Source: Haliotis cracherodii (taxonomy: Eukaryota). From it: a stretch of DNA of 64,000 nt. The stretch spans positions 27,156,001-27,220,000 of the forward strand of contig NW_027266269.1 in NCBI RefSeq assembly GCF_022045235.1, written 5' to 3'. Below are positions 1 through 41,430 of the stretch, piece after piece. The position numbers were made by a program, and so were the translations under genes. The notes beneath the pieces are model-generated. The model saw only the letters and a program-made list of their open reading frames with translations. It was not told the DNA's origin and ran no database searches. Position 1 is the first letter of the stretch. Each line of letters begins with the position of its first letter.

Positions 1-92
1 ACAGGCCTGGGAACCCATGATAGCATGTCATTTGACTGTGTCTAAAACTAAGTGTGCCTTATTCATTTCCATCAGTATATAATTGATGAAGA

Positions 93-188
93 GTGAGTGA
101 GTGAATATGGTTTTACGCCGCTTTTAGCAATATCCCAGCAATATCACGGCGGGGGACACCAGAAATGAGCTTCACACATTGTACCCAT
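93..188 (-). mobile_element. SINE family 1, 5'-truncated copy
   Basis: (GAGT)n tail and the family-1 3' body; the target-site duplication ATAATTGATGAAGAG flanks both sides (~79-93 and ~188-202). Confidence 0.9.
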
Positions 189-499
189 AATTGATGAAGA
201 GGTGGGATACGCTAGATAAGTATATATAAAGAAATGCACACAGTAATGACACAAAACGAATTGTTGGGTGTTTGTGGGTTACAATTTCCCCCTGAAGATA
301 CCACTGAAACATGTCGATAACAACGTACATACCAAACACACAGACGGCAAAGCGTTCCTGTTTTACTTTTTCAATAGTTTCCACAAAAGAATGTTTTGTT
401 TAAATCTACCAGAAAGTGTCAGAAAGTAGGGATATGTTTTAAGTTATTTAACACACTCGTTGCTATCAGCTCGTGAATAGGAATCGGCCTCCGTGATAT

Positions 500-1240
500 A
501 TACTCTCCCCAGTAGCTGATGTTCGAAACTAACAGATGATTATAAACATACAAATAGGTGTCCAGTGATGAACAAGGGCTAGGTGTAACATGGCGATCAA
601 AAACCTATGTTGGTTGCATATTGTAACGGTGCAAGCAACTAAGAAAGACAACAGCAGTGTGTAGTCAAAATATGAACGTTTGAGATGATTTGATCAGTAA
701 TGGTCATACCTAATATAACAATTGGTCAACCATTCAGTTACTTGTATACGGCGTGGCATGGTCTAAATCAAACCCCCAGTAGCAATTTGAGGCAGTCTTG
801 TCCACTCCATCGCAACGCCAGGCCAAGGTCAGCTAATGAAGTATGTGGACCTTGACGTCGGCGCACAAGTCTCCCGATCATGTCCATTTTGGTGATGTTT
901 TGCTCCAGGCACGTCCACAACTATTCAACTTTTCGTTTGGGAGCGAATGTTTTAACCACTGGGCCACCGGACAGCCTCTTGACTCATGAGAACATTACAC
1001 GAGACCATCGGCAACTCCACATTTTTTTACAATCAAAGCACCATTGCCGTCTGGCTAAAATGTATTGATTTGTTAATGGTGGTACAACACGTGGTCGCCG
1101 AGTATGCATATTATCTGCAGGAGTACGACTCAATTCTTGTGGCTTAGCGCCAGCTACTCGTTTTGATGACATCTGTAATGTTTTGGTCAAATCTAACTTC
1201 AAATACATTCTTTCTTTAACCCAGATGTTTACATGTCGAG
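500..1240 (-). mobile_element. Degenerate Tc1/mariner transposon remnant
   Basis: ORF 984..1208(-) reads RRPRVVPPLTNQYILARRQWC...RWSRVMFS, matching the Tc1 'RP...LT..H...R..W....W..V.FSDE' region; the mirror copy is at 39520-40563. Confidence 0.75.
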
Positions 1241-3519
1241 TTGTAAATCTATTTGGTCACCTCTTACGACTGGCATAGGTTTCTGTGGACCAGTTCTGAC
1301 TCGGAATCCCTACAGCGTCGAGTGATCTGACAAAGTATATATTTTCGTGAGAAGCACAACGTATACCATGAGTAAACCTATCAACATGATAATGTCACGG
1401 AGTAAGACAAACACGTGTATCAGGAAGACTGGTATTGATGTGACAGCATAGAAATGTTTGCCAGAATGACTAAACCAAAAGCAATCTCTGCTTCAATTAA
1501 TTTATGAAACTTCTGTTCATCATAATCTTAAAACGTTGTCCGTGATACCTGTAATATTGCTACATACATGCATATGTACATTCGTCTGAAAATATTACAA
1601 GCTCCTCTTTTTGCAATTGGAAGACTATAAAACTGTTATGTTCACTTATAGAACCCTTGGCACGAGACTGAAAGCAGACCGGACTGAATGGATTACACTG
1701 TCACGAAAACGAAAAGCAACTTAAGTAAATACTTAGTGATTTATCACACAAAGGAGAAAAATACTATTTGCCATTTGTTGTTTTGTTTTTCAGTGGAGAA
1801 ATTAAACGAATTCATGACAGGATAAATCAAACCAAAGGCACACACGTGATTTCCACAATAGAACTAAATGTTTTCCAAGACGTTGCCAAGTTGAAGTGCA
1901 AGCTACCCGAGTAATGCGTTTCCGGGGGTCAGTAAGTCTTGATATACGAGCAAAGACGACCTCAGGTTATCAGCCAGCTCTATCTCCTGGAGCCTTGCTG
2001 CTCGTACACCAGGACATGGACAGGGATCACGTCTAGCCATCGATACATGCCATGGAGCCATATACACAGTTCGTCGACTGTTGCATCGTAAAGGACTGGA
2101 AAAGTAGAAAACTTCTGATTGGGAATAATAACTTTGCGAATGAAATCTACACAGTTTTGTCTACCGTATGAATGGAAAATTTGCGATTCATACGATTTTT
2201 TACTCGGCGACTGGTTGCAATATTCTTGACAATTATTAAATATTGTGACCTTTATTGAACGAGGGACAAGTGTTTATGTGTGCCTGAGACCGAGCATACT
2301 GTACGACATTGCCCAAAACTGATTTAATAATAAGTCTTCTATTTGTGATGCTGTCCTTGATATTCACCATTGACAGGGGACATTTTGTGGTAACAACGCA
2401 AGAACAAGAACGGTCTACATGTCGATACAGACAGTCCACAGAAACACACTCTATCTATTACAGTCAAAGAGTAACAGGAATCATCACATTGGTGACCCTG
2501 GAAGCATCTGTCCTGGAACTTCAATAACATATCATCCATCCATGACCTACATCCACACCATCAATCCATCAATTGACTTGAAACGTGACCCATATCTATA
2601 ATCGGTCAATTATCTACAGGCAAATTAGAGCCAAATTTGCCACCTTTCAGTTGACGTTAAGTGTTGAGATTCTCGTACAGGGGAACCGCTACCGCCTGAT
2701 TCCTATGACAAAGTGATGGATGGCCGGGGTCAAGAGTGTGTATGTCGCATTTCTAGTGCTGTACAACTAGAGCTACGGAAAGCAGCGAGACGCCTCATTA
2801 TATCAGTGGCCGGACACAAGGTGAGCAGGCCCATGTTGGTTGGATATACCATGGAGGCGGTGAAATTACAGACTATCTAACACTTGACAGTGCTGCCATG
2901 ATGGGAAACAGAAACCTTATGTCGTGTCACAAGATGTGACAGCCAACGTATCTGAGGTACCTATCGACTAGCAAGCAAATACATATAGTACTTTGTTTGA
3001 AGTCTCGCGGGAGTCGTTGTCTAGATGTTTGTCTGCCGTACCTGAGATATTAATGCCAAACGTAATATATACAAGACCAAATGAATAACTTTGTATTAAG
3101 ACTACCTCATGCTGATATATGGACACTGGATGCTTCTTAGACGTTGTTCAAACAGTTGTCTCATGGAGATAGCATTACCTAGAGGGACTGATGTAAATGA
3201 ACGCCAAATGACCGGTTGTCAGCTCAGGTTGTAAATCCTCAAGGACGAGAAAAGAGAATTATATTTGATTCGTGATCACCACTTAAAGCACTATTTCTGT
3301 ACTGCCCTGTCTGTTAGTTTCATAAGGTGTGATGGTACAGAGGGTTGTCGGTACTGAAGGACAAACAGAAATCGTCGGGTTAAATCTTGGATTTGACTTC
3401 AAAGCCTTAGAGTTTGTTTATTTGCTTGTTGTTTAACGTTGCACTCAGCTATATGACGGCGGTCAAGACCGTTAATCGTGTGAACAGGACGGAGTAACAC
3501 ATTTCCTCATAACATTTCC

Positions 3520-4235
3520 TATGTTTTCTTATGTGATGTCAGCCACATATGTGTCAATGGTTCCGATCAATTAGGATCATTACGCAGTGTTCATCAAATC
3601 AAGATGTATGTAAGCCTTCCAGCACTGTTTGCCGACTGAGATGTCAGCGTCTACCAAATCCTTTGCAATCAGCCCCAAGTGCCCAATTATTGCCGTTAAT
3701 GGTGATTTGAATGTGAGATCTGCGACAGTGTGCTAAGTGCCCACCCTTGAGCTATAGTGTAGAGGATTACATATGTCATCACACCCTGAGAGCCTGGTTA
3801 CTTGCAGATATGTTGCTGTAGTGGGTTGATCGTTCCTTACCGCCATTTGCATACCAATGTCGTGTCGCAGGAACAGACACACCGAATACTTCTAGCTTTT
3901 CTTATCTGATGTTAGCCACATATATGTCAATTGTTCCGATCAATTAGGGTCAGTATCCAGTGTTCCTTAAATCAAGATGTATGTAAGCCTTCTGGCACTG
4001 TTTGCAAGACTAAGATGTCTACGTCTACCAAATTTTGGGCAATCAGCCCCAAGTGCCCAATTATAGCTGTTAATGGTGATTTGAATGTGAAATCTGCGAC
4101 AGTGTGCCAAGTGCCCACCCTTGAGCTATAGTGTAGATGATTACATATGTCATCACAGCCTGAAGGCCTGGTTACTTGTAGATATGTTGCTGTAGTGGGC
4201 TCATCATGTCTTATGGCCACTTGCAGACACACCGA
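3520..4235 (+). repeat. Tandem duplication of a ~370-bp block (two copies)
   Basis: 3520-3885 and 3895-4235 align (e.g. caatcagccccaagtgcccaattat, gtgcccacccttgagctatagtgtag); unit E has a single inverted copy at ~36500-36880. Confidence 0.92.
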
Positions 4236-4534
4236 TGGCTATGGTACTTGGCTGACATTAAGCTAATCTGTAGATGTAAAGTTTTAATAACTTGGTAGCA
4301 TTTACTACACATATTGAACAGGCAAAGGAGAACCACTTCTATTTAAAGCATTTATATTGTATGTATATGCAAAGGTTTGTAAAATCTTACAGGCCGATTA
4401 CCCAGCTGACAGTCCAACACTGTGACAGTCAAAAACAACTTGTTACTTTGTTGTGGGGGTGGGGTTCACTACAAAATTGTGATGGGAAAACAGATTATTT
4501 CATGCATGCTTATCTCATGTATATGAATATGCAC

Positions 4535-4700
4535 AAATGTAATAGCATGCACGTATGTACGTGTGTACGAGTGTGGCTGCTTGTACTTGTCCGGTCTTAT
4601 GCCAATTTTATAGTGCTGGAACACCATGCCGCAGTTCAACAAATATACCCAACTGAGACACAATATATTGACTCCATGCTAATCAGCCCAAACTTGTCTT
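4535..4700 (-). mobile_element. Old SINE family 3 fragment carried in the duplicated unit
   Basis: Diverged match to the family-3 3' half (gtgtggctgcttgtact, catgccgcagtt, gagacacaatatattgactcc); mirrored at ~36200-36350 and ~24395-24480. Confidence 0.65.
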
Positions 4701-5470
4701 ACCCCAAAGTGACCAACGATTTTATATGCTTTGTGTTGGTATGTCTCCATAAATTTTTACCATGACCCTCAAAGTGCTTACATTTTTATCTCTGTCAAAA
4801 GATCAGTGTGCTCTCGATTTTCATTCTCAGCTTCTAGGGGAGTATACCACGCATTTCCCAGCATGTCTGATGCATATTATGTGCAGACGACGTTCCATTT
4901 AGTTTGACACATACCACTTACTTGCTGATATTTAGTGCCAGAAAACTTAATTTACTGTTAATAGCGTCTCACTCTAATATGATTAGTGTGGCGAGCTCAG
5001 GCACCTACTGCTACAAGACTGACCTTGGGTAGCTTGCCAATATTTCACCTGCCACTGCAGACAGTACGTACTTAACTTTCATCATGGAGTAGAAGGAGTG
5101 AAGGCGTTCACTCGTCAAGAGGTTAATTCAACCTATGGCCCATATACGTGAATGTCAACATATCAAACGAGGACAATACACTCTACCCTTTGTTTTTTCC
5201 ATCCTATTTCCATACATATTATGAAATACCTTTGAACCCTTTTAAAAGTGATGTGTCATATAAGTCTCATATTTCATACAGAGGAATGGAAAGGAAGGGA
5301 TGCTGTGCTTTAACGTTAACTTTTGCCGAAATACAGAATTAATTACAGATTAGAAGACCAGTCAGTACTGAATGTCAACAGAAATATCCTCCAGTGTACT
5401 TCTCCAGAAAACAATGCACAAATCTTGTCCTGAAACTAAAACCAAGGTTTTGTTCAACACGTCCTATCCC

Positions 5471-6030
5471 ATCTTCCCGAGGCAAGGGCCTAAGCTGAAT
5501 ATATTAGTCCAGTTTCCACCCTTGCCGAACATGGCTGGAATTACTAGGCTCGAACGTAGCCCCACCAATGGCTATTTCAAGTGATGTTCCTTCTTTGTCC
5601 CTCCTATTGACCAAACATGATCAGATTCCTTCCCTCATATCACTTGAATTTGCTTAAAACTAAATAGAGGTGCATAGTCTAGACGATCTGATCGATAAAC
5701 AATATCGATTTTGTTATAAAACGGGTCTTACCCTGCGAATTGCATCAGATCACTTGAGCACCTTGATTAAAAACATGAAAAGATTTGCGAAATATCTGTC
5801 GATGCCCAGTTGACGGTACACATGCATTGTAAATCCATCAGTCGACCGAAATATGCTCGTGGACATCCATGTTGTTTTCGAACCGGATGTCTGGTTCGTT
5901 ACGCGATTTTGATGGGACTATGCACAGACTCGTCAGTCCACCCAAACTGTAACTCCGGAATTCCAGCAAAGTTTGGCAAAGGTGGAAACTGGACTTTTAT
6001 AGTTAGTTAAAGCCCTTGCCTCGGGAAGAT
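5471..6030. mobile_element. Non-autonomous DNA transposon (MITE-like) with terminal inverted repeats
   Basis: Perfect 19-bp TIR ATCTTCCCGAGGCAAGGGC / GCCCTTGCCTCGGGAAGAT plus a subterminal inverted repeat (~5508-5543 vs ~5958-5996); absent from the paralogous sites at ~13300-13325 and ~35232-35270. Confidence 0.85.
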
Positions 6031-6336
6031 TATCTTAGATGGACATTTTGTTCAATGCGTCTTACCCGTTTCCCTGTTGTTCCTGCTAATAAATTTCATT
6101 TGTGTGAATACTGACTGCCCGAAACAAACTTCATAACATACACTTAGTCCATTGAAGAAACATTCCGAGGGATATAGTTTGGTGTTTGTGTGAATTGAAT
6201 CCATTCTGAAATGCCAGGATTATCACTGTAAGGCGAAAATATTTCTCGATTTTGCTCAACTAATTCTATACTTGAAGATCCCGAGGCGCGTGAAGAAAGC
6301 ACCAGAAGAACAATGGATATCGGCAGAAGGCAAATA

Positions 6337-6416
6337 CCATGTGTGGAAGTCGAGAGCTTTTAACGTAACAATTGTTTCCTGCATCCCTCAGGCGTTGTGA
6401 ATGGAGGAAACCTCAG
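6337..6416 (+). other. Invariant 80-bp non-coding core, copy 1 of 4 (function unknown)
   Basis: CCATGTGTGGAAGTCGAGAGC...GAATGGAGGAAACCTCAG is identical at 6337-6416(+), 13573-13652(+), 23935-24014(-) and 33333-33412(-). Confidence 0.9.
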
Positions 6417-6926
6417 AGTAATTAACCAGTGAAGCATTTGACTTTTTCTCTGACGTCTAGTGTCTTTTTATGCTGAGATTTAATGCCACAGTGCACAGTG
6501 ACAGCGTGTGGAGGGGTTAGGTTGCTTCGCGTGATTATTATTGCATCTGTTAAATGGATATTGAAATCCTTTCGCGAACACTTGGTGTCATCACTGCTGC
6601 CACCTACACAAACACCTTATTATTAGTATCAAGATGGCTTGGACTACTTTTGTTTGTCATGATTCAGATCACAAACCCGACTTGTATATGTGGTTAATAT
6701 TTAATAACATTTCAAAACATGTGTGCGAAGTTCAAGCTTTGGTCTCTTGACACCAATTCACACCAAAAACCTCGTCTGCAACACAAGACTCCATTCCTCC
6801 ACCATTCAACTGAAACGCTTGGTATAACTAAGATACAGACCACGGGAGCTCGACGCAAAACCAACTCACTGACACAACAAATATTTGGAACCTGGTTTTC
6901 GATATCAACATGACAATATCATTCAA

Positions 6927-7200
6927 GGGGGCACGGGTGGTCCAGCCGTCTTAGGCTCCGCGATTCGCTTTGCCTCGTTGCGTCCCTTTGGCGCGCTGCA
7001 AACCTATGGTTGTGGGTTCGAATCCCGGTTCGCCCCGACTATGTTTCTAGGTTTGTCAGCACCATACCCGTGCTCGTTGGTTTCACCGAAGTGGTAAACT
7101 CTGAGACCTGCATGACTTCGGGCTTCCTCCCACATTAAGCTGACACGCAATGATATAACTAGAAGGCTGTTAAAAGCGGCGTTAAATCAAACTCACTCAC
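6927..7200 (+). mobile_element. SINE family 2 (tRNA-derived head, V-SINE-like body), full length
   Basis: A-box-like GGTGGTCCAGCCGTCTTAGGC, B box GGGTTCGAATCCC, body ...ggcttcctcccacattaagctgac..., tail gcggcgttaaa plus (ACTC)n; near-identical copies elsewhere in the window. Confidence 0.9.
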
Positions 7201-7239
7201 ACATGTAATGCAATTGTTATTTTTGCAATTGACTTCACG

Positions 7240-8200
7240 TCACTGCATTGTGTGATTGAGTATGACAGTTTCATGACGAGATAACAGCTGTTTCATATCT
7301 GCATTGTGTGAATGTAGCAAGGTAGTGCATAATCCAGGGACAAGGTGTACCCTTTACTATCCAATTCACTCGCTAGTTACAATCCTACGTCCGTTCTGTT
7401 TCTTGGTATTCCTGGTATTGTTTTACCAAAATAAACAAATGTGAAAGGCGCTACTGAGAATGCTTACATAGAATGGTTATGTTATGTGAGGCCTCATCAG
7501 TGAGAACAACGACGAACCCTACGGGTAGAGCAGACATACTTTGGGTTACAGCTGGTTGGGAACGAATGGATTTATTCCAGTTCTGTTTCCTCTCTTTCAG
7601 CTTGTGATTTCTACTATCGACAGCATCATGCATTTAATTCAACCCACTCTGAAACACATACAACACGTAAAATGTTCTCTGATCTGCTTCGACAGCATCC
7701 ATAATTATTTTAACGTTGTGATCACAATTGGGATGATGCTCCTCACGATAGTTTGGTCCATATTTAAAAAAACTGACGAAGTTTACTACCAGTTCATAAA
7801 TTAGTATCAATTCCCTTGTTTACAATTTTCAGATTGAGCTGATCTAATGAAGTCTGTTTCTCTTTTGGACAAACGTTTCAAAGCAACATCAAGAACTGTA
7901 CTCTCTTTTCGACACTGTGGGTTGTAACTGTTTATAGACCTATCCATTAGCGAATGTTACTTGTATCGTTTGATTTCTTTTGACCACCAAGAGTATAGTC
8001 TTGTTCCTTTTTGTGTAGTCCCAGTGCTTTCTCCCGGAGAAGGGGCCACGGGTGACCAAATCGTCTCCACAGCGAATCGCGTCATCCGTTGGGCACGCCA
8101 GAAACCTATCCTTATGGGTTCGAATCCCGGTTTCTCTCAGTTAATAAATTAGTATCAACCCCCTTGTTTACATTTTTTAGATTCAGGAACATTCCCTCTG
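7240..8200 (-). mobile_element. Degenerate Penelope-like retroelement ORF fragment (region N-terminal to the RT core)
   Basis: Minus-strand translations give LKIVNKGID and MHDAVDSRNHKLKE...PAVTQSMSALPVGFVVVLTDEASHNITILCK, resembling the PLE 'NKGID...KGPKYREP...YVLVPADKASNNIVFVCK' segment. Confidence 0.75.
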
Positions 8201-8964
8201 TTTCTGATTTAATGAAGGGTACATTACTTTACATTTCATGTGGCAGCCTACGCAAACCTAACTTTTATAGATGTCTAAATATAAACAAATATCCAATGAT
8301 TGTGGATTTGAATCTCAGCTGACATTTCACATGGTTTATGATGCGCTTATGGCTTTCAGCATGGCATTTGTAAATGAACTGCCCCACTTTATCAGTTCGT
8401 CTGACACACTGTGATACATAGAATACTAAACGAGCTTCCGTGTAATACAAATTTTATGAAACGAGTGAATAGTTTGTTATCTGACGAGCAAAGGCGTGTC
8501 AGATATCAGAACTATGCAAGAGGCAGTCATGATTTAAGCTAAATTGATAGCTCAATTTCAGTTATGCATAAACCTTCAGTGACAATATCTGTTGTGTTGA
8601 TTTTTCCTTTGGTATTTCTTTTTAACCTTCGTATGACCTTTCCGATCAGATGACTTTCAGAGCCTTGTGGCTCTATTATTTCCAATTTTGTTCTGCAGTG
8701 AGCCGCCTAATTTCAATAATAATGTCACAGTAACACTGTCCTCTTCAATACTATGCAGTAGTTCATTAGTCAGGACAAAGTCTTTCATTAGTCTTTCAGA
8801 GATATTTTCCTCGTAAAACACATGTTTTTTAACAAAAGCAGACACCATTACAGCATTGCTTTAAAATTCAGTATGAGAGCTATTTATATATTAATTGATT
8901 ATTTTCTCTTGTTAAAGTTTTGATTATAGTAATGTGGGTTTCATACATTGGAAAACGATGTACA

Positions 8965-10230
8965 ACATGCGTCTCACTGGGGAGTCCCCCAGTGTTAACC
9001 TGACACGGCATGATATTACTCAAATGCGGAATACACACGCATTACAAATCAGAGTATTGCGAATATTATTGTCCTCAGCCTTTTCTGACTTGGTAAAAAC
9101 ATGGCCCTTAGTTATGTAATGCTCCTTCACAATGTTTGTTTGTTCCAAACTGAAGCTGACACGCCCTGATAATCCAAATAATCGACTTATTGAGCTGGTG
9201 ATATTTTATTCAACATCTTCCTATGGATGACGTATAGTGTATATATACAACCGACCAACAAAAAGGAAACTGATAAAATGATAGTGAAAGGTGTGATGTC
9301 GATAGATATCTGATAAAGGTTTGGGCTCATATATCAATATCTGGGGTGTCCACCATGTTGGTCGATACTTGCACGACATCTTGATGGCATACTGTTGAAT
9401 AGCATGACTGTGTTTGGTTGTCCTTGGTATTGCACGCCATTCCACCCGAAGAGCTGCCCCAAACTGGACCAAACTGTCGTGTGTTGGGTCAAATTGCAAT
9501 CCCTTTGTAAATATCAGTCAGTTATTTCCACATCAACATGTATCACTATGACATCATGACGAATAAGGTTATATGATGTTTAGCATAATTATTAGATTAA
9601 TATATAATCCTTTTATTCTATATTAACATGTTCGCAATCGATCCTGAAACTCTGATTTACATGAAACCCAGCAATGCTGCCATATATATTCGGCATTTTG
9701 GGACCATAACTGAATGTGTTGTGTTTTAGTGCTTCTATATTTCATCATGAACATGCCGTGAAGATATCAGATTTGTGGATATCTCCTTTGGTGTTCCTTC
9801 TGTCTCGTCATATGATCTTTCCGATGCCTCACAAAGCCTCATGGCTCTTTTATGTTCAAATTTGTTCTGCAATGAACCACTTAATTAAAATTTTAATTAC
9901 ACTGTAACACTGCCTTCAGATCAACGACTTGCGTCACTTTGTGGAGTCCTCCAGTCTTAACCCTGACACGGAATGATACTCAAATACTGAATTCTCACTC
10001 ACTCACTGATGACATATCAGAGTAATGCGATCATTATTGTCCTTAATGTTTTCTGACTTCCTGACTATACGGTCTTCATTTGTCAAATGCTGCTTCACAA
10101 AGTGTTGTTGCTCCCACATGAAGCTGACACGTCCTGGAATGACTGAAGTCCAAATCATTTGATGGCTAGAACTTATTGTGCTAAAGATATTCTTAGTCAA
10201 TATCATCCTTAGGATGACGCATTCTATATA
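8965..10230 (+). repeat. Direct repeat of ~280 bp (8965-9240 and 9925-10230) bracketing a Tc1 remnant
   Basis: Shared strings such as gcgtc(t)cact..ggagtcc, tattactcaaat, attattgtcct, tgaagctgacacg and ggatgacg. Confidence 0.8.
9325..9500 (-). mobile_element. Tc1 transposase C-terminal remnant
   Basis: Minus strand reads AALRVEWRAIP, then after a frameshift NSMPSRCRASIDQHGGHPRY-stop, the typical Tc1 end 'L.EEW..IP...SM.RRC..VI...GGHT.Y'. Confidence 0.75.
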
Positions 10231-10834
10231 ACGAGTACCAATCAGTTCATCTTACACAGAATCAGTTTTTCACCATAATTCAGCCAAATGTGAGGAAAAG
10301 TCACCAGGAAGTATCAACACAAATGTGAAATGATTATGTTACCCGCTGCTTTCGTTTGGAGTACTCTACACACGAGATCCATAAAAAGTAATTCCTCGTT
10401 GGTAGCTCGCTCTATTGTGAGAGATGGACTGTGAACGTGATGTGGTCTGGTTGCTGCTTATCCAGTTCAGACTTGAGGGAACAGGACAGACATTTGATTA
10501 AACGTAACAAGACACACAATAGGATATCCTGTCGCTTGATTACATGTTTAAAGTACATTGCCTATATATGATTTATCATACTTTACATGCTCCAGACAGA
10601 CATGACATATTATTACGTACAACATGACCACTTGTCGCTAGAGGTTGCTATAAATACTTAAAAGTATGCCGTCAGAACGTTTCTTTATCGACTAAAGGGA
10701 CATGATCAGTTCCATTGTGAGACCAGGTTAATTCCGTGTTGCCGTACGCTGATTGTAGCTCAGTGTAAATTGTTCTTTTAGCGATGAATTGCGGGTATAA
10801 CTGGCAAATTCATTCACCCATTCACTACGCTGAG

Positions 10835-30075: not shown

Positions 30076-30237
30076 GGGACGGTCGGGTAGCCTAGTGGTT
30101 AAAGCGTTCGCACGTCACGCCGAAGACCCGGGTTCGATTGTGTAAAGCCCATTTCTGGTGTCCCCCGCCGTGATATTGCTGGAATATTGCTAAAAGCGGC
30201 GTAAAACCGTACTCACTCACTCACTCACTCACTCACT
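30076..30237 (+). mobile_element. SINE family 1 copy with internal deletion
   Basis: gggtagcctagtggttaaagcgttcg...gggttcgatt head and (ACTC)n tail. Confidence 0.9.
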
Positions 30238-31340: not shown

Positions 31341-31630
31341 GAGTGAGTGAGTGAGTTTGGTTTAACCTCGCTTTTAACACTATTCCAGTTATATTGCGGC
31401 ATGTCAGCTTAATGGGGGGGGGGGGGGGGGGGAAGCCCGAAGTTATGCAGGTTGCAGACGTTATCCACTTCGGTAAAACCCAAGGGCACGGATATGGTGC
31501 TTACAAACCCAGAAACATAATCGAAGCGAACTGGGATTCGAACCCACAAGTATAGGTTTCCGGCGTGCCCAAGGGACGCAATTCTGCACAGCTAATCGCG
31601 GCGCCTCAGACGACTGGGCCACCCGTGCAC
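31341..31630 (-). mobile_element. SINE family 2 copy with expanded poly-G tract
   Basis: Reverse complement of family 2, with a ~20-nt G run at ~31413-31432. Confidence 0.9.
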
Positions 31631-31899
31631 CAGACTTATTAAATCTGAAAAGTGTAAACAAGGGAATTGATGCTAATTGATGAACTGATAGAAACATTTC
31701 TCAGCTATTCAAATATGAACCAAACTATCGTGAAGAGCCTCATCCCAATTTAGATCACAACGTCAAAATAATTATGGATGCTGTCAAAGCATATCCAATA
31801 ACTGTGCTAAAAGAGAAAATGGACCAGTTGCATGTGTTTCAGAGTGGGTTTCATAAAATGCATGATGCTATCGATAGTAGAAACCACAAGCTGAAAGAG

Positions 31900-32060
31900 T
31901 GTGTGTGTGTGGTTTTACGCCACCTTTAGCAATATTCCAGCAATATCACGGCGGGGGACACCAGAAATTGGCTTCACAAATTGTACCCATGTGGGGAATC
32001 GAACCAGGGCCTTCGGCGTGACGAGCGAACGCTTTAACCACTAGGCTACCCCACCATCCA
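31900..32060 (-). mobile_element. SINE family 1 copy
   Basis: TSD ACAAGCTGAA(A/C)GAG on both flanks; empty sites in units A and B. Confidence 0.9.
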
Positions 32061-32187
32061 ACAAGCTGAACGAGAGGAAACAGAATAAGTCCATTCGGTC
32101 CCAACCAGCTGTTATCCAAAGCATGTCTGCCCTACCCGAAGGGTTTGTAGTTGTTCCCTCTAACATGGCCGCAAATAACATAATCAT

Positions 32188-32471
32188 AGTGAGTGAGTGA
32201 GTGAGTTGGGTTTAACGCCGCTTTTAACAGTATTCCAGTTATATCACGGCGTGTCAGCTTAATGTGGGAGGAAAGCCCGAAGTGATACAGGTCTAAGACG
32301 TTTACCACTTCGGTGAAACCCACGAGCACGGGTATGGTGCTGACAAACCTAGAAACATAATTGGGGCGAACCGGGATTCGAACCTACAATCATAGAATTC
32401 TGTAGTGCCCAAGGGACGCAACTCTGCACAGCGAATCGCGGCGCCTTAGACGACTGGGACACCCGTGCCCC
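32188..32471 (-). mobile_element. SINE family 2 copy, full length
   Basis: Reverse complement of 51138-51413; imperfect TSD cataatcatagt/catagccataagt. Confidence 0.92.
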
Positions 32472-33332
32472 AAACATAGCCATAAGTATTACTCAGTAGC
32501 GCCTGTTAGATTTTATTTAATTTTGGTAAAACAAAACCAGGAATACCAAGAACAGGGCGGACGTAGCATTTTGTGCCTGCATTTTACACTGCCTTGCTAC
32601 ATTCACGACAATGCAGATATGAAAAAGTTGTTATCTCGTCATTAAACTACTATGCGCAATCACACGATGCAATGCTAGTCTAAGCCATCTCGATATTATA
32701 TGGTGTTTGCACATTTCCTATATACATGTCATCTGACTGTCTGGTGTGGTCTATAATACATGAAATTACCTTGCCCGTATCATTCAAACATGCAGTTACG
32801 TTCTTGTGTGTCTTGTTACTGTAACTAAATGTCTGTCAAGCGTCCGCAGCTCTAATCATACGGTAACAGATTATAAGCAGCCAACTCCTGACCTTCACAA
32901 TGCACCACTTGCACAATGACGAGCGACCAAGCAGGAATTACGCATCATGTGTCCCGGTCGTGTGGAAGCACAGAACATTTGGCGAGCAGCAATAATCAGA
33001 AATTCCATACATAAAGTACATGTAGGTTCATCCATAGCTCCTCCTCACAATGAAGTATATACACCAGCATGTAAATCAATGATTCGTTTAAGCTGGATGA
33101 GAAGATGTTTATAAGACATCAGTGGAAATGTAAGCATTACCTGCCCTACCGGAAGCATCCGCCACGATTTAATATCCATTCATAAGATGCGATGGCAATT
33201 TGCAAATTGCCTATCATGAGGGGCAACCCAACCCGCTCCACACGCTGTCATTGTGCACTGTGGCATTCAATCTCGGCATAAAAAGATGCTAGATGTCAGA
33301 GAAAAAGTCAAATGCTTCACTGGTTAGTTACT

Positions 33333-33412
33333 CTGAGGTTTCCTCCATTCACAACGCCTGAGGGATGCAGGAAACAATTGTTACGTTAAAAGCTCTCGAC
33401 TTCCACACATGG
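33333..33412 (-). other. Invariant 80-bp core, copy 4
   Basis: Reverse complement is identical to 6337-6416. Confidence 0.9.
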
Positions 33413-33488
33413 CATTTGCCTTCTGCCAATATCCATTTTTCTGGTGCTTTCTTCACGCGCCTCGGGAGCTTTGAGTATAGAATTAAAA

Positions 33489-35009
33489 AACTGACGTCCA
33501 AAAGAAACTTTACTAACTGAAAATATAAATTTCAGACAAAGTATAAATGTTTTTTCGATGAAGTCTATCTAAAACACATAACCTTAACACAACAATAGTG
33601 TATGCAGAATATGTTAATCGTCTGTTACATGTTTGCGAGATAACACGCGAAAAAGTGAAAAACACGTGCACCACGGACAACTGCAAATGCACGTGGGGGT
33701 AAGGGTATAAAACTATTGCAACGGCAAGTCAGACATCAACAGTGATATATAAACAAAAAGGAAATGCCACGACTCAGTCGAACAACGTGAACGAGCCTTT
33801 GGTATGGAACAGATGGGAGCCACCCACGCCCATATTGCACGAACCTTCGGTTGCTTCCGTTTTGCCGTTACCAACTTGATGCAACGTTACAGACAGACAG
33901 GGCGGACCGCTGACAGGCCAAGAACAGGCAGACCGAGGGTGACCACGCCCCATGATGACCAGTACTTGCGTACCTTGCACCTCCTAAATCGCTTCCTGAC
34001 AGTGACGTCATCGGCGACAAATGCCTTAGGCCACAGGGTTAGTCGACAAACAGTGGCCAGGAGACTCAGGGCTAAAGGAATCCGGGCTTTTAGACCATAC
34101 AGAGGACAGCTATTGACAGCGCAACATCGTCGTCTGCGATTGAGATGGGCCCGGAATGTACGACGTTGGCAACGACGTGACTGGCAGAGGGTTTTCTTCA
34201 CTGACGAAAGTCGATTCTGTATGTTTAGGGCTGATGGAAGACAACGTGTTTACTGCCGAAGGGTTGGAACGAACGGCGGCGTGTTGCGTGTAGGAGGTCG
34301 TACCATATGGTGGAGGGAGTCATGGTGTGGGGAGGGATCTGTGGGCAGGAGAGGACACCGCTGGTCATCGTTGACGGAAATTTGACTGCTCAGCGTTACA
34401 TGGATAACATTCTTCGTCCAGTTGTCCTACCATTTCTCCAACAGCAGCCACGTGGTGTCATTTATCAGCATGACAACGCTAGAGCCCATACAGCCAGAAT
34501 TGTCACTAACATAACCAACAACGTCAAAGCCCTGCCGTGGCCTGCACGCTCACCCAACATGTCCCCCATAGAACACCTCTGGGACTTCATGAATCGTCGT
34601 GTTCGACAACGACCACACTCTCCAGCCAACCGGCAAGAACTGAACTTGTCCCCCTAAAAAGAATGGTGTCCTCATCAGACGACTGACTTTTTCTGTGCGT
34701 CGAAGAGTTTTTTGCGTGTATTGAGGCATTTGGTGGTCACACACGCTACTAATGACTTGTTTTTGAACGTGAGCGATTGTTTATGTACTCTGCCTAATGT
34801 CAATGATTCTGAAAGCTCGTGTTTTGTGCCACACCCAACTTTGGGGTGCTCTGACGTCATTCTCGGTCGCGGTATGATTGTCATTTTCAGTGTTGATTAT
34901 GTTGATATATCGATCTTCCCAATACACTTTACTTCATGCATGTATGTTTTTTTTGTCTTTGAGCAAGAGTGATTTCAAAATCTGGTAAAGTTTCTTTTGG
35001 ACGTCAGTT
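33489..35009 (+). mobile_element. Full-length Tc1-family DNA transposon (~1.5 kb)
   Basis: TIR AACTGACGTCCAAAAGAAACTTTA / TAAAGTTTCTTTTGGACGTCAGTT; TA on the right flank (left reads AA); empty site gaattaaTAtttg at ~24085-24097. Confidence 0.95.
33764..34752 (+). pseudogene. Tc1 DDE transposase, frameshifted
   Basis: MPRLS start, HTH and RPRTGRPRVTT, catalytic motifs FTDESRF, HDNARAH and WPARSPNMSPIEHLW, and a C-terminal GGHTRY-stop; split across ORFs 33804..34385 and 34307..34657 by several frameshifts. Confidence 0.93.
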
Positions 35010-38000
35010 TATTTGAAAATTTGGGTAATAGCTTCTACCTAAACAGTGATAATCCTGGCATTTCAGAATAGATTCAATTTCACACCAACACAAAACTATA
35101 TCGCTCGGAATGTTTTTTCAATGTCTCAATTGGACATAGTACAGTATATGACACAATATGTTATGAAGCAAAGTTTGATTGGGGCATTATTCACACAAAT
35201 GAAATTTATCAACAGGAACAACAGGGAAACGGGTAAGATGTATTGAGCAAAACCTTGGTTTTAGTTTTCAGGACTAGGTTTGGGCAACATTTTCTGGAGG
35301 AGTACACTGGAGGAATTTTCTGTTTACTTTCAGTACCGACTGATCTGTATCTGTATTCTCGTCGCAACATGGCTGAAATAATCTGATGCGAGGTTAAACT
35401 TTAACTCACTCACTCACTGTATCAGGCAAACGAGAAGATAATAGCACAGCATCTCATCATTTCCAGTAAGAGACTTAAATTGACACGTCGTTTTTAAAAG
35501 GGACCAAATGTATTTCATAAATATATGGAAATAGGATGAAAAGAAATGGTAGAGTGTATTGTCCTCGTTTGATATTTTGACATTTACGTATATGGGCTAG
35601 TGGGTGAATTAAACATTTGCCTTGACAAGCGAACGCTTTCACTGCTTCTCCTCTATGATCAAAGTTAAGTACGTACTGTCTGCAGAGGCAGATGAAATGT
35701 TACTCCAGGTCAGTCTTGTAGCAGTAGGTGCCTGAGCCTGTCACAGTAATCATATCAGAGTGAGACGCTATAAACAGTCAATTCAGTTTTCTGGCACTAA
35801 ATATCAGCAAGTAAGTGTTATATGTCAAACTAAATGGAACGTCGTCTGAACACAATGTGCATCAGATACTTTGGCAAATGATTGATATACTCCCCAAGAA
35901 GCTGAGAATGAAAATCGAGAGCAAACTGATCTACTGACACAATAATAATGCGCTTGGAGGGTCATGGTAAAAATCTATGGGGACGTTGGGAGTGTCATAC
36001 AAAATATGCCAAGCATCAAGGGAGGGCAAGGTTTTTCTGTAGATTGGAGCATCAAAAACCTCTGATAGAACCCCCAAACCCCACACCCAACCCCAACCCC
36101 ACTCCCAACCCCAACCCCTTACACATACGCTACCACACACTAACAAACTAACACTCACAGCATGTCATATCGCAGTTCACTTTGGAATAAAACAAGGTAA
36201 GGATGATTGGCATGGAGTCAATATACTGTGTCTCAGTGGGGTATTTTATGAAGCTGCGACACGGTGTCTCAATGTGCCAGCACTATGAAACTGGCAACGG
36301 ACCAGACAAGCACAAGCAGCCACACTCGCACACTCACACGTGCATGCTATTACGTTTGTGCATATTTCGTTCACATAAGATAAATATGCATGAATAAGCT
36401 GTTGCCCCTTTTACAACCTTGTAGTGAAACCCATCTCCACAACAGAGTTACAAGTTCTTTGGAACCCTTTACATGTACAGATTAGTTATGTCGGCGGAAT
36501 ACCATAGCCGTCGGTGTGTCTGTTCCTGTGACACGACATTGGTATGCAAGTGGCCATAAGGAACGATCAACCCACTACAGCAACATATCTACAAGTAACT
36601 AGGCCTTCAGGGTGTGATGACATATGTAATCATCTACACTATAGCTCAAGGGTGGGCACTTAGCACACTGTCGCAGATCTCACATTCAAATCACCATTAA
36701 CGGCTATAATTGGGCACTTGGGGCTGATTGCCCAAGATTTTGTAGACGTAGACATCTTAGTCTTGCAAACAGTGCTTGAAGGCTTACATACATCTTGATT
36801 TAAGGAACACTGGATACTGACCCTAATCGATCGGAACAATTGACATATATGTGGCTAACATCATATAAGAAAAGCTAGAAGTATTTTTTTGGGATATATA
36901 GTACGCCGTCCTATTCCAACTATCTAAAGTCAAATCCAAGTTTTAACCCGACGATTTTTGTGTGTCCTTCAGTACCAACAACCCTCTGTCATTAAAACCT
37001 GTTTTGATGTACCATCACGCTTAATAAAACTAACAGACAGGGCAGTACAGCAATAGTGCTTAAAGTGGGGATCACGAATCAAATACAATTCAGTTTTCTC
37101 GTCCTTGAGGATTTATAGCCTGATCTGACAACCTGTCATTTGGCGTTCATTTACATCAGCACCTCTAGGTAATGCTATCTCCAGAAGACAACATGCACTG
37201 TTTGAACAAGGTCACTTGTCTATGAAGCATCCAGTGCCCATATATCAGCATGAGGCAATCTTGATACAAAGCTATTCATATGGTCATGGATTTATTACCA
37301 TTGGCATTAACATCTCAGGTACGGAAGACAAACATGTTGACAACGAGACTTCCAACACAGTACAATGTATTTGCTCGCTGGTCGATAGGTACCTCAGGTA
37401 CATAGGCTGTCCAATCCTGTGACACGACACGAGGTTCCTGGCAGCACTGTCAAGTGTCAAATAGTCTGTAATTTCAACGCCTGCATGATATATACAACCT
37501 ACATGGGCCTGCTCACCTTGTGTTCGGTCACTAATATAATGAGGCGTCTCGCTGCTTTCCGTAGCTCTAGTTGTACAGCACTAGAAATGCGACATACACA
37601 CTCTTGACCCCAGCCATCTATCACTCTGTCATAGGAATCAGGCGGTAGCAGTTCCCCTGTACGAGGATCTCAACACTTAACGTCAACTGAAAGGTGGCAA
37701 ATTTGGTTCTAATTTGCCTGGAGATTATTGACCGATTATAGGTTTGGGGCATGTTTCAAGTCAATTGATTGATGGTGTGGATGTAGGTGATGCATGGGAT
37801 GATAAGTTCCAGGACCGGTGCTTCCAGGGTCACCAATGGGATGCTTCCCGTTACTCTTTTACCGTAGAATGTGTAACTTTGAGATAGAGTATGTTTAAGC
37901 AGACAAGCTGTATCGACATATTGATTTTCCGCTAAAAGTATGAGCTAATATATTCATTATGACAAGAGTGTTGCATTTGGTATCGGTTTGCACGTCTATC

Positions 38001-39519
38001 AATTCTCTGAGTTATTGAAGTTCTATGACAGATGTGTCCAGGCTAAGATTCACCAATGTGACGATATCTCATGCTATTTAACTTATACATGTGTAACACT
38101 GTGATAGTGAGCGAGTGAATGCCATTTTACTTCACATTTGCAATAATTCAACCGTATCTCATTGTGGTCGAGTCTGCTACTGCAGACAAGTTGTACCCAT
38201 GTGTAGACTGTTCTTGTTCTTGCTATGTTACCACAAAATGTCCCCTGTCAATGGTGAACATCACGGACAACATCACAAATTGCCTGTCTCCAACAATATC
38301 ATGAAATGATCCCCATCAAGGACATTATCTCGAAATGGCCGTACCCAAAGATGTAATTATCATAAATGCAAACATTCAAAATATTAAGTGTGATTAGTAG
38401 AAGACTAATCATTAAATCAGTTTCTTGGCAATGTCGTAAAATACGCTCGGTCTGAGGCACACATAAACAGTTGTCCTCGTTCAATGAAGGTCATAAAATA
38501 AAATATTATTTGTCAAGAATATTACAACCGTATATCCCAAATGAAGTCGCTGAGTACAATATTATTTTAATCCCAAATTTTCCATTCATGAGACACACTA
38601 AACTGTGTAGATTTTTGTTCGCAGAGTTATTATTCCAAATCAGAAGTTTTCTACTTTTCCAGTCCTTTACGATGCAACAGTCGACGAACTGTGTATATGG
38701 CTCCATGGCATGTATCGATGGCTAGACGTGATCCCTGTCCATGCCCTGATGTACGAGCAGCAAGGCTCCAGGAGATAGAGCTGGCTGATAACCTGAGGTC
38801 GTCTTTGCTCGTGTATCAAGACTAACTGAACCCCGGAAACGCATTACTCGGGTAGCTTCCACTTCAACTTGGCAACGTCTTGGAAAACATTCGGATCCAT
38901 TATGAAAATCACGTGTATATCTTTGGTTTGATTTATCCTGTCCTAATGATTATTTCAGTTCTCCACTGAAAATCAAAACACCAAATAGCAAATAGTTGTT
39001 TTTTCTCCTTTGTGTGATAAATGATACAATATTTACCTAAACAAGTTGCATGTGGCTTCGTTGACAGTATAATCCCTTCAGTCCAGTCTGCTTTCAGTCT
39101 TGTTTCAATGGTTCTACAAGTGAACATAACCATTTTATAATATTCCAATTGCGAAAAGAGCAGCTTGTAATATTTACTGACAAATGTACATATATGAAAC
39201 CATATTACAGGTATCACGGGCAACGTGTCAAGAATAAGATGAACAGAAGGTATTTAAAGCAGAGGCTGTTTTAGTCATTCAGGACACCAACCTGATACTG
39301 TCACATATATAACAGTCTTCTTGATACACGTGTTTGTCTTATTTCGTGACATTATCATGTTGGTAGGTTCACTCATGGTATACGTAGCGCTATTCACTAA
39401 AAGATCAACTTTGTCAGATCACTCGACGCTGTGGGGATTCCGTGTCAGAACTGGTCCACAGAAACCTATGCCGGTCGTAAGAGGTGACCAAATAGATTTA
39501 CAAGCCGACATATAAACAT

Positions 39520-40563
39520 GTGGCTTAAATAAAGAAAAAACTTGAAAGTTAGATTTGACCAAAATATTAGAAACGTTATCAAACCTAGTAGCTGTAGTAG
39601 CTGGGGCCCGGCCACCGGAATTCAGGTTACTGACCAGACAAGTAGAAATCGTACGCCTGCAGATAATATACATGATCGGCGACCACGTGTTGTACCACTG
39701 TTAATAAATCAATACATTCTAGCCAGACGGCAATGGTGTTCAGATCATAAAACAATGTGGAAATCACTGATGGTCTCGTGTAATGTTTTCACATGAGTCC
39801 AGATGCCCTCTGTGTTTTCTGAATAGTTGCGAACGTAACTGGAGGCGTCCAAACGAACGTCATATGGACGTCAACATACAAGGCAACATGATATATTTGG
39901 GGGTGGGTTGTTTGATATGGCGTGGGATTTCTATGACTGCCAGAACGGTACTGCAAATTGTCCATGGAAAGGTCACAAAAGTCCTACCTAGACAACACTC
40001 TTGCGCCAGAGTTGTACCGTTTGCGCACCACGCTGGTCCATATGTTGTCATTCAAGGCGATAAGTCTCGTGCCAAGCGAACACATATCATACCTGACTAC
40101 CTCCAGCAGCAACACCATCACCAGAATGCAAAGGCTTATCCTGAGTTCTGACCTTTCCCCCACAGGGCATGTTTTGGACATGATCGGGAAACGTGTACAC
40201 CCACTTCATTATCCGACCTTGACCTGGCGTTGCAATGGAGCGTACAAGACTCTTTCAAATTGTTACTGGGAGTTGATTCAGACCATGCCACGCCGTATAC
40301 TAGTAAACGAATATTTGACCAATTGTTAGGAATGACCATTACTGATCAAATCATCTCAAACGTTCATATTTTGACTACATACCATTGTTGTCCTTCTTAG
40401 TTGCTTGCACCCACACAATATGCCACCAACATATTTTATTGATTGCCATGTTACACCTAGCCCTTGCATGTTATTATGCATCCATTACCATCACTCGATA
40501 CCTCTTTGTGTGTTTATAATCATCTGGGGTTTTTTAACATCGCCTACTTTTTTGGGAGAGTAT
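39520..40563 (+). mobile_element. Older degenerate Tc1 element (mirror of 500-1240, more complete)
   Basis: Fragments RRPRVVPLL..ARRQW, MFSHESR, WRGISMTART, QGDKSRAKRT, SSDLSPTGHVLD and ELIQTMPRR in successive frames. Confidence 0.8.
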
Positions 40564-41124
40564 ATATCTTGGATGCCCATTCCTATTCACGAGCTGATAG
40601 CAACGAGTGTGTTAAATGATTTAAAACACATCCCTACTTCCTGATACTTAAAACACATCCCTACTTGTAGATTTAGACAAAACATTCGTTTGTGGAAAGT
40701 ATTGGAAAAGTAAAACAGAAACTCTTTACCCTCTGTTTGTTTGGTATGTACGCTGTTGTCGACATGTTTCAGTTGTATCTTCAGGGACAAAAGGTAACAC
40801 ACAAACACCCAACAATTCGTTTTGTGTTATTAGTGTGTGGATTTCTTTATATCTACTTACACTAGCGTATCCCATCTCTTAATCAATATTAGCCTGTTTT
40901 TATGTTGTGTTGTAAAATGTTAATATCTTTTTACATGCTCTATGACTAGTTTTATGTACATCTGTGATATTCTAGTTATTATACTGCCCTTCGTCGGCAG
41001 AATTGTATGCAGTTTAAAATATATTGTTCATGTCAACTTTTGTTTCGTCACGATATGGCTGAAATATTGCCAATGTGAAGTTAAACTTTCACTCACTCAC
41101 TCACTCTTAATCAATATATACTGT

Positions 41125-41430
41125 TGGAAATGAATAAGGGAAAACTTAGATTTAGACACAGTAAATTGATATGTTGTCATGGGTTCCCAGGCTTATTTAC
41201 CAAATACGCGTTGGAAGCAATGCACAGTCTTATGGAAGTGAATGAGGGCACACCTAGTTTTAGACACAGTAAATTGATATGTTGTCACGGGTTCCCAGGT
41301 TTATCTACCAAATGCGCGTTGGAAGCAATGCACAGTCTTATGGAAGTGAATGAGGGCACACCTAGGTTTGGCCAAGTAAATTGATATGTTGTCACGGGTT
41401 CCCAGGCTTATCTACCAAATACGCGTTGGA
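41125..41430 (+). repeat. Tandem repeat, ~108 bp x ~2.7, at the outer edge of unit E
   Basis: gtaaattgatatgttgtca.gggttcccagg at 41161, 41269 and 41376; inverted copy at window positions 1-70. Confidence 0.92.

What the first reader, a model, noticed from the sequence alone, without database searches (positions are those of the whole stretch)
1..41430. A ~41-kb convergent four-unit array (A> B> <C <E) of non-coding, TE-fragment-rich DNA
Seen: two direct units followed by two inverted units of one ancestral block more than 10 kb long, with symmetry near 19.8-20 kb and colinear block order kept despite many indels. No intact host ORF is visible. Inference: large diverged palindromic arrays are usually kept around something functional. 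Read-through transcription here would give kilobase-scale imperfect dsRNA, as at hairpin-RNA/endo-siRNA loci.
Basis: partly seen in the sequence, partly recalled or inferred. Interest (0 to 1): 0.8.

Follow-up and report, generated by a model that had tools for sequence, protein, structure and literature searches.

The report
Old four-copy inverted duplication, conserved core
This is a real but old and decaying four-copy duplication of about 15 kb of non-coding DNA in an abalone-like genome; nothing shows that it makes hairpin RNA, and the only odd feature is a short core kept almost identical in all four copies.

Summary
Self-alignment shows one block present as A(+) -2276..12944, B(+) 13273..19784, C(-) 26756..20108 and E(-) 42774..28013, colinear, centred near 20 kb. 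It runs past both ends of the stated range. B and C are partial copies. The blocks occur only at this locus; roughly a third of the 5.7 kb that was laid is dispersed repeat. Pfam finds only Tc1/mariner remnants.

The copies differ by 12-17% in substitutions, with 32-102 gap openings per pair. They arose in at least three steps. Two related species (B, C) show several distinct contigs per place, so the copies probably predate their split.

Divergence is not uniform. A core (6279-6438) is invariant in 146 of 157 four-way columns, 80 of them consecutive. It is not coding, matches no Rfam family and is not unusually structured.

The hairpin-RNA reading fails the tests I could run: poor arm complementarity, no target elsewhere, none of the stretch's words in three probable RNA runs of this species, and a survey reporting no endo-siRNA pathway in mollusks. 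Small RNAs and the central junction were not tested.

First readers noted other 30-37-kb palindromes elsewhere in this genome (unchecked).

Verdict: ordinary fossil segmental duplication; the core is a modest open lead.

The parts
1..12944 (+). Unit A, the long copy; it begins left of the window at -2276. Sub-blocks: a 190-5469, b 6046-8717, X 10233-12944.
   Evidence: Chains; dot plots.
13273..19784 (+). Unit B, a partial copy: core plus b 13273-17841 and X 18082-19784. It has no 'a' block. It carries a B-only insertion at about 13.9-15.7 kb with a LINE 3' tail.
   Evidence: ORF 14951-15184 resembles, by eye, the C-terminus of the RNase_H-bearing ORF L014:5095-6120.
19785..20107 (.). Short spacer at the centre of symmetry, between the end of B and the tail of C.
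   Evidence: B-C chain ends at 19780/21092; C-E chain reaches 20108.
20108..26756 (-). Unit C, a partial copy: a 26756-24246, core 24090-23847, X plus tail 23460-20108. It lacks the equivalent of A 6650-10233.
28013..42774 (-). Unit E, the long copy: a 40887-35231, b 35252-29379, remnants of X and tail 28708-28013.
6261..6504 (.). Conserved core, copy in A. The most conserved part is 6279-6438; 6337-6416 is invariant in all four units.
   Evidence: 146 of 157 gap-free columns invariant, 80 of them in a row.
13515..13674 (.). Conserved core, copy in B. It has a 22-bp deletion just after the core.
23847..24090 (.). Conserved core, copy in C.
33223..33485 (.). Conserved core, copy in E. It has a 3-bp deletion.
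1864..2140 (.). High-identity island: A-E 96.0% over 278 columns (partner 38617-38894). C shares only 1929-2008.
2596..2836 (.). High-identity island shared by A, C (25753-25937) and E (37501-37741), at 92-97%.
3900..4150 (.). A-E island at 93-97%. It lies in a 330-bp segment that is tandemly duplicated in A (3524-3854 / 3897-4228).
33753..34654 (+). Degraded Tc1/mariner transposase remnant, inserted in E only. It splits the sequence just upstream of the E core.
   Evidence: HTH_Tnp_Tc3_2 at 1.2e-10, DDE_3 at 3.6e-12; the pre-core piece lies at 35043-35118.
39533..40326 (+). Older Tc1-like remnant in E, shared with A (987-1256, - strand), so older than the A/E duplication.
   Evidence: HTH_Tnp_Tc3_2 at 3.4e-6 and 0.0067, both below the curated cut-off. 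Chains.
5471..6030 (.). A-only insertion of 560 bp with about 72-bp terminal inverted repeats (MITE-like) and very high copy number.
   Evidence: 5471-5542 vs 6030-5959 at 84.7%; gap in the A-E chain; depth.
41125..41430 (.). 108-bp tandem repeat (2.8 copies) inside the outer part of E. The A arm has its counterpart at 5-145.

Best explanation
This is a fossil, locus-specific segmental duplication.

What it is: a block of about 15 kb of mostly unique, non-coding DNA, sprinkled with SINE, MITE and Tc1 fragments. It was copied locally in at least three steps. The result is two long copies in inverted orientation (A, E) bracketing two partial copies (B direct, C inverted).

Age: the copies are old, with Jukes-Cantor distances of 0.12-0.26. 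Related species appear to carry several paralogous versions, so the copies probably predate the split from them.

What has happened since: the copies have mostly decayed as neutral DNA does. Sister copies show equal private changes, independent transposon insertions and many indels.

The mosaic of identity: I attribute the patches specific to the A/E and A/C pairs, and the younger X block shared by A and C, to exchange between copies (gene conversion or a later partial duplication). This is inferred. I attribute the 160-240-bp core kept in all four units to constraint on a short non-coding element of unknown role, most likely a cis-regulatory or DNA-level element. This too is inferred.

The array as a whole is not maintained for a function and is not a hairpin-RNA gene.
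For: - Structure and locus specificity; probes.
- Multi-step history. In block a, A-E is JC 0.165 against A-C 0.258 and C-E 0.257. In block X, A-C is 0.117 against A-B 0.213 and B-C 0.209. In block b, all three pairs are 0.20-0.23. Unit C is therefore a mosaic of old and young parts.
- Clock-like symmetry of private changes in sister copies: 59 vs 58, and 62 vs 58.
- Independent insertions. The Tc1 remnant is in E only. The MITE-like element is in A only. The LINE tail is in B only. The dispersed repeat at 10835-11093 lies between different blocks in A and in C.
- No coding signal. The only transposon or recognisable gene domains among 137 ORFs are Tc1 ones, plus two weak single hits (DUF2430, Strumpellin) not followed up. 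The seven island ORFs have no Pfam family. Island substitutions show no 3-periodicity (chi-square p 0.37-0.66).
- Copies probably shared with relatives. Contigs of two related species cover all 30 bins, with 1-6 distinct contigs per low-copy place. Both better and worse versions are present, e.g. 14 vs 38 differences over about 300-390 bp.
- Not a misassembly of one sequence. The arms differ by more than 12% and carry different insertions. Nine DNA runs from three studies of the species hold 32-84% of the words of unit A.
- Core.
- Three first-reader notes report other 30-37-kb palindromes in this genome (unchecked). This fits a recurrent mutational process.
Against: - Divergence is not uniform. 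Several islands are shared by three copies, which also fits selection on more than the core.
- Two small contig sets guessed to be RNA, from a related species in two studies, hold pieces of the unit. One is a 1,578-nt colinear contig over 1800-3235 at depth 14.8. The region may therefore be transcribed.
- Island GC (41.7%) barely exceeds inter-island GC (39.6%), so there is no clear mark of GC-biased conversion.
- Constraint versus conversion for the core could not be separated, because orthologous sequences could not be retrieved.
- The inversion junction was not checked with long reads. Small RNAs were not examined.
Confidence: 0.6

Rival explanations
1. Non-coding gene or regulatory-module family. 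The core and the other islands are functional non-coding elements (modules of a long unspliced RNA, or enhancers) under purifying selection. The four units persist because each carries them.
For: - The core is present in all four units, including the two truncated ones. 146 of 157 columns are invariant, and all variable sites are private to one unit.
- Three-way islands at 2596-2836 and 3195-3335.
- Where unit A differs from the relatives' contigs, 33 of 38 best-supported differences carry unit E's letter. These are late changes private to A, so the islands were even more alike earlier.
- A possible unspliced transcript in a relative.
Against: - No Rfam match at E up to 5 in 1700-6700.
- The core does not fold better than shuffles (z +0.75 and +0.69), and no pair covaries.
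- No contig words in the species' own three probable-RNA runs.
- Many islands are specific to one pair (A-E), as gene conversion would give.
- The whole X block shows a younger A-C relation, so exchange between copies does occur here.
Confidence: 0.22
2. A long read-through transcript folds into imperfect dsRNA, and the locus works as a hairpin-RNA/endo-siRNA source, or as a piRNA source.
For: - Inverted arms exist. Near-identical patches of up to 278 bp (96%) would pair if they lay on one RNA.
- Possible transcription in a relative.
- Mollusks have abundant piRNAs (PMC12479628 abstract).
Against: - Arms are 87.7% identical in substitutions with 102 gap openings. Only 59 exact runs of 21 nt or more (1,929 b) occur in 8,025 A-E columns. 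The inner B-C arms have 9 such runs.
- The outer arms need a transcript of more than 35 kb.
- No homologous target elsewhere for any of the 5 probes.
- 0.00 of the words in three probable-RNA runs of the species.
- No excess of A>G or T>C among differences in the probable-RNA contigs relative to the DNA contigs, hence no hyper-editing mark. This is a weak test, because species differences are mixed in.
Confidence: 0.08
3. Artefact: a misassembly, or a chance cluster of dispersed transposon copies.
For: The central junction was not tested with long reads. About a third of the 5.7 kb laid is dispersed repeat.
Against: - Colinear chains of up to 16 HSPs and 8 kb.
- The blocks are absent elsewhere in the 1.18-Gb assembly.
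- Arms differ by more than 12% and carry different insertions, unlike collapsed or mirrored assemblies.
- Independent DNA runs hold the sequence.
- Control regions reach at most 1.5-4.1 kb of chain, against 10.0 kb here.
Confidence: 0.03

Closest known systems
Large palindromes of mammalian sex chromosomes (PMC8327919, PMC8981503: search listing and start of abstracts only)
   Same: Multi-kb inverted arms around a spacer, locus-specific, conserved between related species. Exchange between arms is the likely source of some high-identity patches.
   Different: Those arms stay more than 99% identical through continuing gene conversion, and they carry testis-expressed protein-coding gene families. 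Here the arms are 83-88% identical, no gene was found, and two nested partial copies sit between the long arms.
Drosophila hairpin-RNA (hpRNA) loci (PMC10317233, PMC10292708: search listing and start of abstracts only). Details of arm quality and target homology are recalled, not read.
   Same: Inverted duplication that could in principle fold back on one transcript.
   Different: As I recall it, hpRNA arms are highly complementary, derive from and target a gene elsewhere, and yield 21-nt siRNAs. Here complementarity is poor, no target exists in the genome (5 of 5 probes), and the host phylum is reported to lack a dedicated endo-siRNA pathway (PMC12479628).
piRNA clusters (general concept recalled; mollusk piRNAs in PMC12479628, abstract)
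   Same: Non-coding, tens of kb, contains transposon fragments, possibly transcribed without splicing.
   Different: Two thirds of the stretch laid is unique DNA rather than transposon fragments. No small-RNA data. Clusters are not defined by internal duplication or by a conserved core.
Ordinary old segmental duplications with patchy gene conversion between paralogues (general knowledge, recalled)
   Same: Locus-specific copies, mosaic identity, independent insertions and deletions, no function needed.
   Different: A short block kept at 93% invariant columns in all four copies, with the same limits in all six pairs, is more than patchy pairwise conversion readily explains.

Membership tests
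hpRNA / endo-siRNA locus | Inverted-repeat arms in cis | tested here: met
   A vs E and B vs C are inverted and colinear.
hpRNA / endo-siRNA locus | Long, highly complementary stem | tested here: not met
   A-E: 87.7% substitution identity, 102 gap openings, 1,929 of 8,025 columns in exact runs of 21 nt or more. B-C: 83.4%, 309 of 2,286 columns.
hpRNA / endo-siRNA locus | Both arms on one transcript | tested here: inconclusive
   One search shows only a 1.6-kb unspliced contig in a relative's probable-RNA run, with no strand information; 0.00 of the words in three probable-RNA runs of the species.
hpRNA / endo-siRNA locus | Dicer-type 21-22-nt small RNAs from the arms | not testable with these tools
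   No small-RNA run was offered. The literature is against the pathway in mollusks.
hpRNA / endo-siRNA locus | Sequence homology to a target gene elsewhere | tested here: not met
   5 of 5 probes match only this locus, plus short dispersed repeats.
piRNA cluster | Dense, uniquely mapping 26-31-nt small RNAs | not testable with these tools
   No small-RNA data.
piRNA cluster | Made largely of transposon fragments | tested here: inconclusive
   About 1.9 of the 5.7 kb laid is high-copy. Tc1, MITE-like, SINE-like and LINE pieces are present. Most of the sequence is unique.
Gene-conversion-maintained palindrome (sex-chromosome type) | Arm-to-arm identity above 99% | tested here: not met
   80.9% with gaps, 87.7% without.
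Gene-conversion-maintained palindrome (sex-chromosome type) | Protein-coding genes in the arms | tested here: not met
   the only transposon or recognisable gene domains are Tc1 remnants, plus two weak unfollowed hits. Exons shorter than 72 aa would be missed.
Segmental duplication (local, inverted plus direct) | Colinear multi-kb copies confined to one locus | tested here: met
   Controls.
Dispersed or composite transposon | Copies at many loci | tested here: not met
Structured non-coding RNA (for the core) | Rfam match, stable fold or covarying pairs | tested here: not met
   0 matches at E up to 5; z +0.75 and +0.69; 0 of 58 pairs covary. With only four near-identical sequences, the covariation test has little power.

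The most novel reading that the evidence does not exclude
The 160-240-bp core, and perhaps the three-way islands, is a lineage-specific functional non-coding element, either a regulatory DNA element or a module of a long unspliced RNA. It has been held almost unchanged in four paralogous copies for far longer than the age of the abalone species compared. The convergent array would then be a small family of non-coding genes, whose near-identical patches could also pair between convergent transcripts.
Probability: 0.2. Interest if true: 0.55.

Novelty: new member of a known kind. Interest (0 to 1): 0.3.

Why it matters
As it stands, this is one more old local duplication in a repeat-rich mollusk genome. 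It adds a checked example to the large fossil palindromes that first readers keep noting in this assembly. That recurrence points to a mutational process that makes 30-40-kb inverted duplications, not to selection on each one. The only part that could matter more is the core. If cross-species comparison shows it is constrained rather than homogenised, it would be a handle on an unknown non-coding element in abalone. The locus is also a concrete place to test whether a mollusk processes long inverted-repeat transcripts at all.

Tried and rejected
- Coding exons. I suspected the islands were exons of a duplicated gene. The evidence is against it. The core has stops in all six frames. The one island ORF shared by A and C differs at 16 of 70 residues by my count of the printed translations. 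Island substitutions show no codon periodicity. The seven island ORFs have no Pfam family. The relative's 1.6-kb contig is colinear, not spliced.
- miRNA or structured RNA. A scan of 100-nt windows over unit A on both strands put SINE-like and tRNA-like pieces on top. Two of the listed best folders touch islands: 1940-2039(-) at -34.7 kcal/mol and 2720-2819(+). Neither is a clean miRNA-type hairpin. Rfam had one hit in the whole window at gathering score, a tRNA-like SINE at 53173-53244, and none at E up to 5 in 1700-6700.
- GC-biased conversion. The GC difference is too small to use.
- Relatives' differences as a test of constraint. Only 40 of 927 differences were printed, chosen by support, so densities along the stretch cannot be compared. 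I use them only for the polarity of changes.
- Base rate of such arrays. I wanted nine arbitrary control regions and got three (see below), so one search is a thin control.
- Not done: the junction check with long reads and any small-RNA test. Reads were laid on unit A.
- Supplements of PMC12479628 were not opened. They may hold per-species small-RNA tables that bear on the siRNA claim.
Full report
**Setting.** The window is G000:C6:27156001-27220000 of a 1.18-Gb assembly in 80 contigs. It has no N and about 40% G+C. An earlier follow-up note calls the genome an abalone (note s1-826206). In agreement, exons of the Egg_lysin family (PF01303) lie on contig 7 at E 3.9e-11 and 4.2e-10, with 0 of 14 control genomes matching. 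That the family is restricted to abalone and close relatives is recalled, not tested.

**Observation.** One ancestral block, which I divide into a, b (starting with a conserved core) and X plus tail, is present four times:

- A(+) -2276..12944
- B(+) 13273..19784
- C(-) 26756..20108
- E(-) 42774..28013

A and E are long (15.2 and 14.8 kb). B lacks a. C lacks most of b.

Chains hold 2,286-8,025 aligned columns at 76-81% identity with gaps, or 83.4-87.7% without. Gap openings number 32-102 per pair. The centre of symmetry lies at about 19.7-20.8 kb.

As a control I ran the same chaining on other DNA of this genome. The best chain, direct or inverted, was 0-1,509 columns in three arbitrary 60-kb regions. 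It was 657-4,092 columns in the two flanks. The array's inverted chain is 10,012 columns. Only five controls were possible.

**Nature of the DNA.** Five probes were searched against the whole assembly: 974-2341, 2400-4300, 6155-6565, 7240-8720 and 11500-12944. All five have long matches only at this locus. Elsewhere they match only short dispersed pieces of about 50-330 bp. The tool warns that counts are lower bounds. Contig depth in related species marks 3328-3518, 4474-4855, 5429-6192 and 6766-7338 as high-copy. So roughly a third of the 5.7 kb laid is dispersed repeat and two thirds is unique. 'TE-fragment-rich' is only partly apt.

Of 137 stop-to-stop ORFs of 72 aa or more in the window, Pfam names Tc1/mariner domains (HTH_Tnp_Tc3_2 in 3, DDE_3 in 1, HTH_32 in 1). 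It also gives two weak single hits, DUF2430 at 0.00019 and Strumpellin at 0.003, which I did not follow up.

Insertions differ between units:

- A Tc1 remnant at 33753-34654 is in E only.
- A MITE-like element at 5471-6030 is in A only.
- A LINE 3' tail is in B only.
- The dispersed repeat at 10835-11093 lies between different blocks in A and in C.
- An older Tc1-like remnant is shared by A (987-1256) and E (39533-40326), so it predates their split.

**History.** Distances were taken on three-way gap-free columns.

- Block a, islands excluded, 842 columns: A-E JC 0.165; A-C 0.258; C-E 0.257.
- Block b, 630 columns: A-B 0.224; A-E 0.201; B-E 0.230.
- Block X, 1,230 columns: A-C 0.117; A-B 0.213; B-C 0.209.

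Unit C is thus old relative to A in block a but young in block X. The array needed at least three events, or a large exchange between A and C. It is not one en-bloc mirror copy. Private changes in sister copies are equal (59 vs 58; 62 vs 58), as under a neutral clock.

**Relatives.** Nine DNA runs from three studies of the window's species hold 32-84% of the sampled words of 1800-7500. Runs labelled as three other organisms (B, C, D) hold 17-18%. I laid one run each of organisms B and C at a minimum of 80% likeness. Their contigs cover all 30 bins, with 1-6 distinct contigs at low-copy places. Both better and worse versions occur: for example 14 differences in 390 bp against 38 in 308 bp. Those two species therefore seem to carry several of the paralogous units. 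Their best versions differ from unit A by roughly 3-6%, far less than the paralogues differ from each other. The duplications probably predate those species. This is inferred, since I could not see their loci.

Of the 38 best-supported differences I checked, 33 carry the letter of unit E. They are late changes private to unit A. They include a cluster of 16 listed differences (15 carrying unit E's letter) within 2164-2332.

**Non-uniform divergence.** Identity per 100 aligned bases has 2-6 times the binomial variance in every pair. Islands of 92-98% stand in a background of 75-87%:

- 1864-2140 (A-E 96.0% over 278 columns)
- 2596-2836 (all three of A, C, E)
- 3195-3335
- 3900-4150 (A-E)
- the core

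The core is the only block kept in all four units. In 6279-6438, 146 of 157 gap-free columns are invariant. 6337-6416 is an unbroken run of 80 invariant columns. Under a crude star model with 70% invariant columns, such a run has probability about 5e-13. Reading the alignment, all variable core sites are private to one unit. The core occurs nowhere else in the genome.

**What the islands are not.**

- Not evidently coding. The core has stops in every frame. Substitutions show no 3-periodicity. The one shared island ORF differs at 16 of 70 residues by my count. Seven island ORFs have no Pfam family.
- Not a known or evidently structured RNA. Rfam gives 0 matches at E up to 5. Fold z-scores are +0.75 and +0.69. 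None of 58 pairs covaries. A hairpin scan found no clean miRNA-type hairpin, although two of its listed best folders touch islands.
- GC content does not set them apart.

**Transcription.** No listed holder is on record as RNA. Three small runs of the species guessed to be RNA hold 0.00 of the words. Two small runs of another organism (E, two studies), also only guessed to be RNA, hold 5-6%. One gives a 1,578-nt contig colinear with 1800-3235, with 91 differences, 42 gaps and depth 14.8. The other gives short contigs at 1800-2098, 2497-2923, 3946-4182 and 6155-6338. A single-copy contig at that depth in a 73-Mb contig set suggests RNA, but this is inference. It gives neither strand nor extent, and it shows no splicing.

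**Hairpin reading.** The DNA-level condition, inverted arms, is met. The rest is not, or could not be tested.

- Only 59 exact runs of 21 nt or more (1,929 b) lie in 8,025 A-E columns. The inner B-C arms have 9 such runs (309 b).
- The outer arms would need a transcript of more than 35 kb.
- There is no homologous target elsewhere (5 of 5 probes).
- PMC12479628 surveyed small RNAs across mollusks and lists a Haliotis rufescens genome among its references. [quoted passage not shown] The authors concede limits of sensitivity.

A piRNA role cannot be judged without small-RNA data.

**Conclusion.**

- Best reading (0.6): a fossil, stepwise segmental duplication decaying neutrally. Pair-specific patches come from exchange between copies. 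One short core is probably under constraint.
- Rival (about 0.2): the core and islands are functional non-coding elements, and the units are a small non-coding gene family.
- Artefact: about 0.03.

First-reader notes report other 30-37-kb palindromes on other DNA of this genome (s1-844827, s1-841691, s1-836070; unchecked). If true, they make this array one of a kind that the genome produces repeatedly.

Noticed in passing
window 57170-58157: 43-bp satellite, 23.1 copies, 85% matches. Next to it is a 234-bp tandem repeat at 56348-56827, 2.1 copies.
   Followed up: no
window 53173-53244, also 43.6-44.0, 58.8-59.1 and 59.5-59.8 kb: tRNA-like head of a SINE (Rfam tRNA, 32.5 bits). Its relatives give recurring pseudo-ORFs with similar translations. 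This family reaches by far the highest contig depths at 6957-7147.
   Followed up: partly
window 2164-2332: Cluster of 16 best-supported differences between unit A and the relatives' contigs within about 170 bp. 15 of them carry unit E's letter, so they are private to unit A. This looks like a complex mutation or a small conversion from an unseen donor.
   Followed up: partly
window 3524-3854 / 3897-4228: 330-bp segment tandemly duplicated in unit A only (88% between the two copies). Unit E has one copy.
   Followed up: no
L014:5095-6120 (window about -4.9 to -3.9 kb, - strand): 342-aa open frame with an RNase_H domain (3.9e-18), the 3' part of a LINE. Its C-terminal tail recurs in unit B (14951-15184).
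   Followed up: partly
window 42763-43102: Low-complexity stretch that reads as proline- or glycine-rich ORFs on opposite strands, just outside the outer end of unit E.
   Followed up: no
G000:C7:25190671-25249396: Four Egg_lysin (PF01303) exon matches within 59 kb, probably two neighbouring genes. Used only to check the kind of organism.
   Followed up: no
window 43-84 kb (right flank): A direct chain of 4,092 columns in 14 HSPs across about 30 kb, probably repeated SINE or other TE copies rather than a duplication. Not resolved.
   Followed up: no
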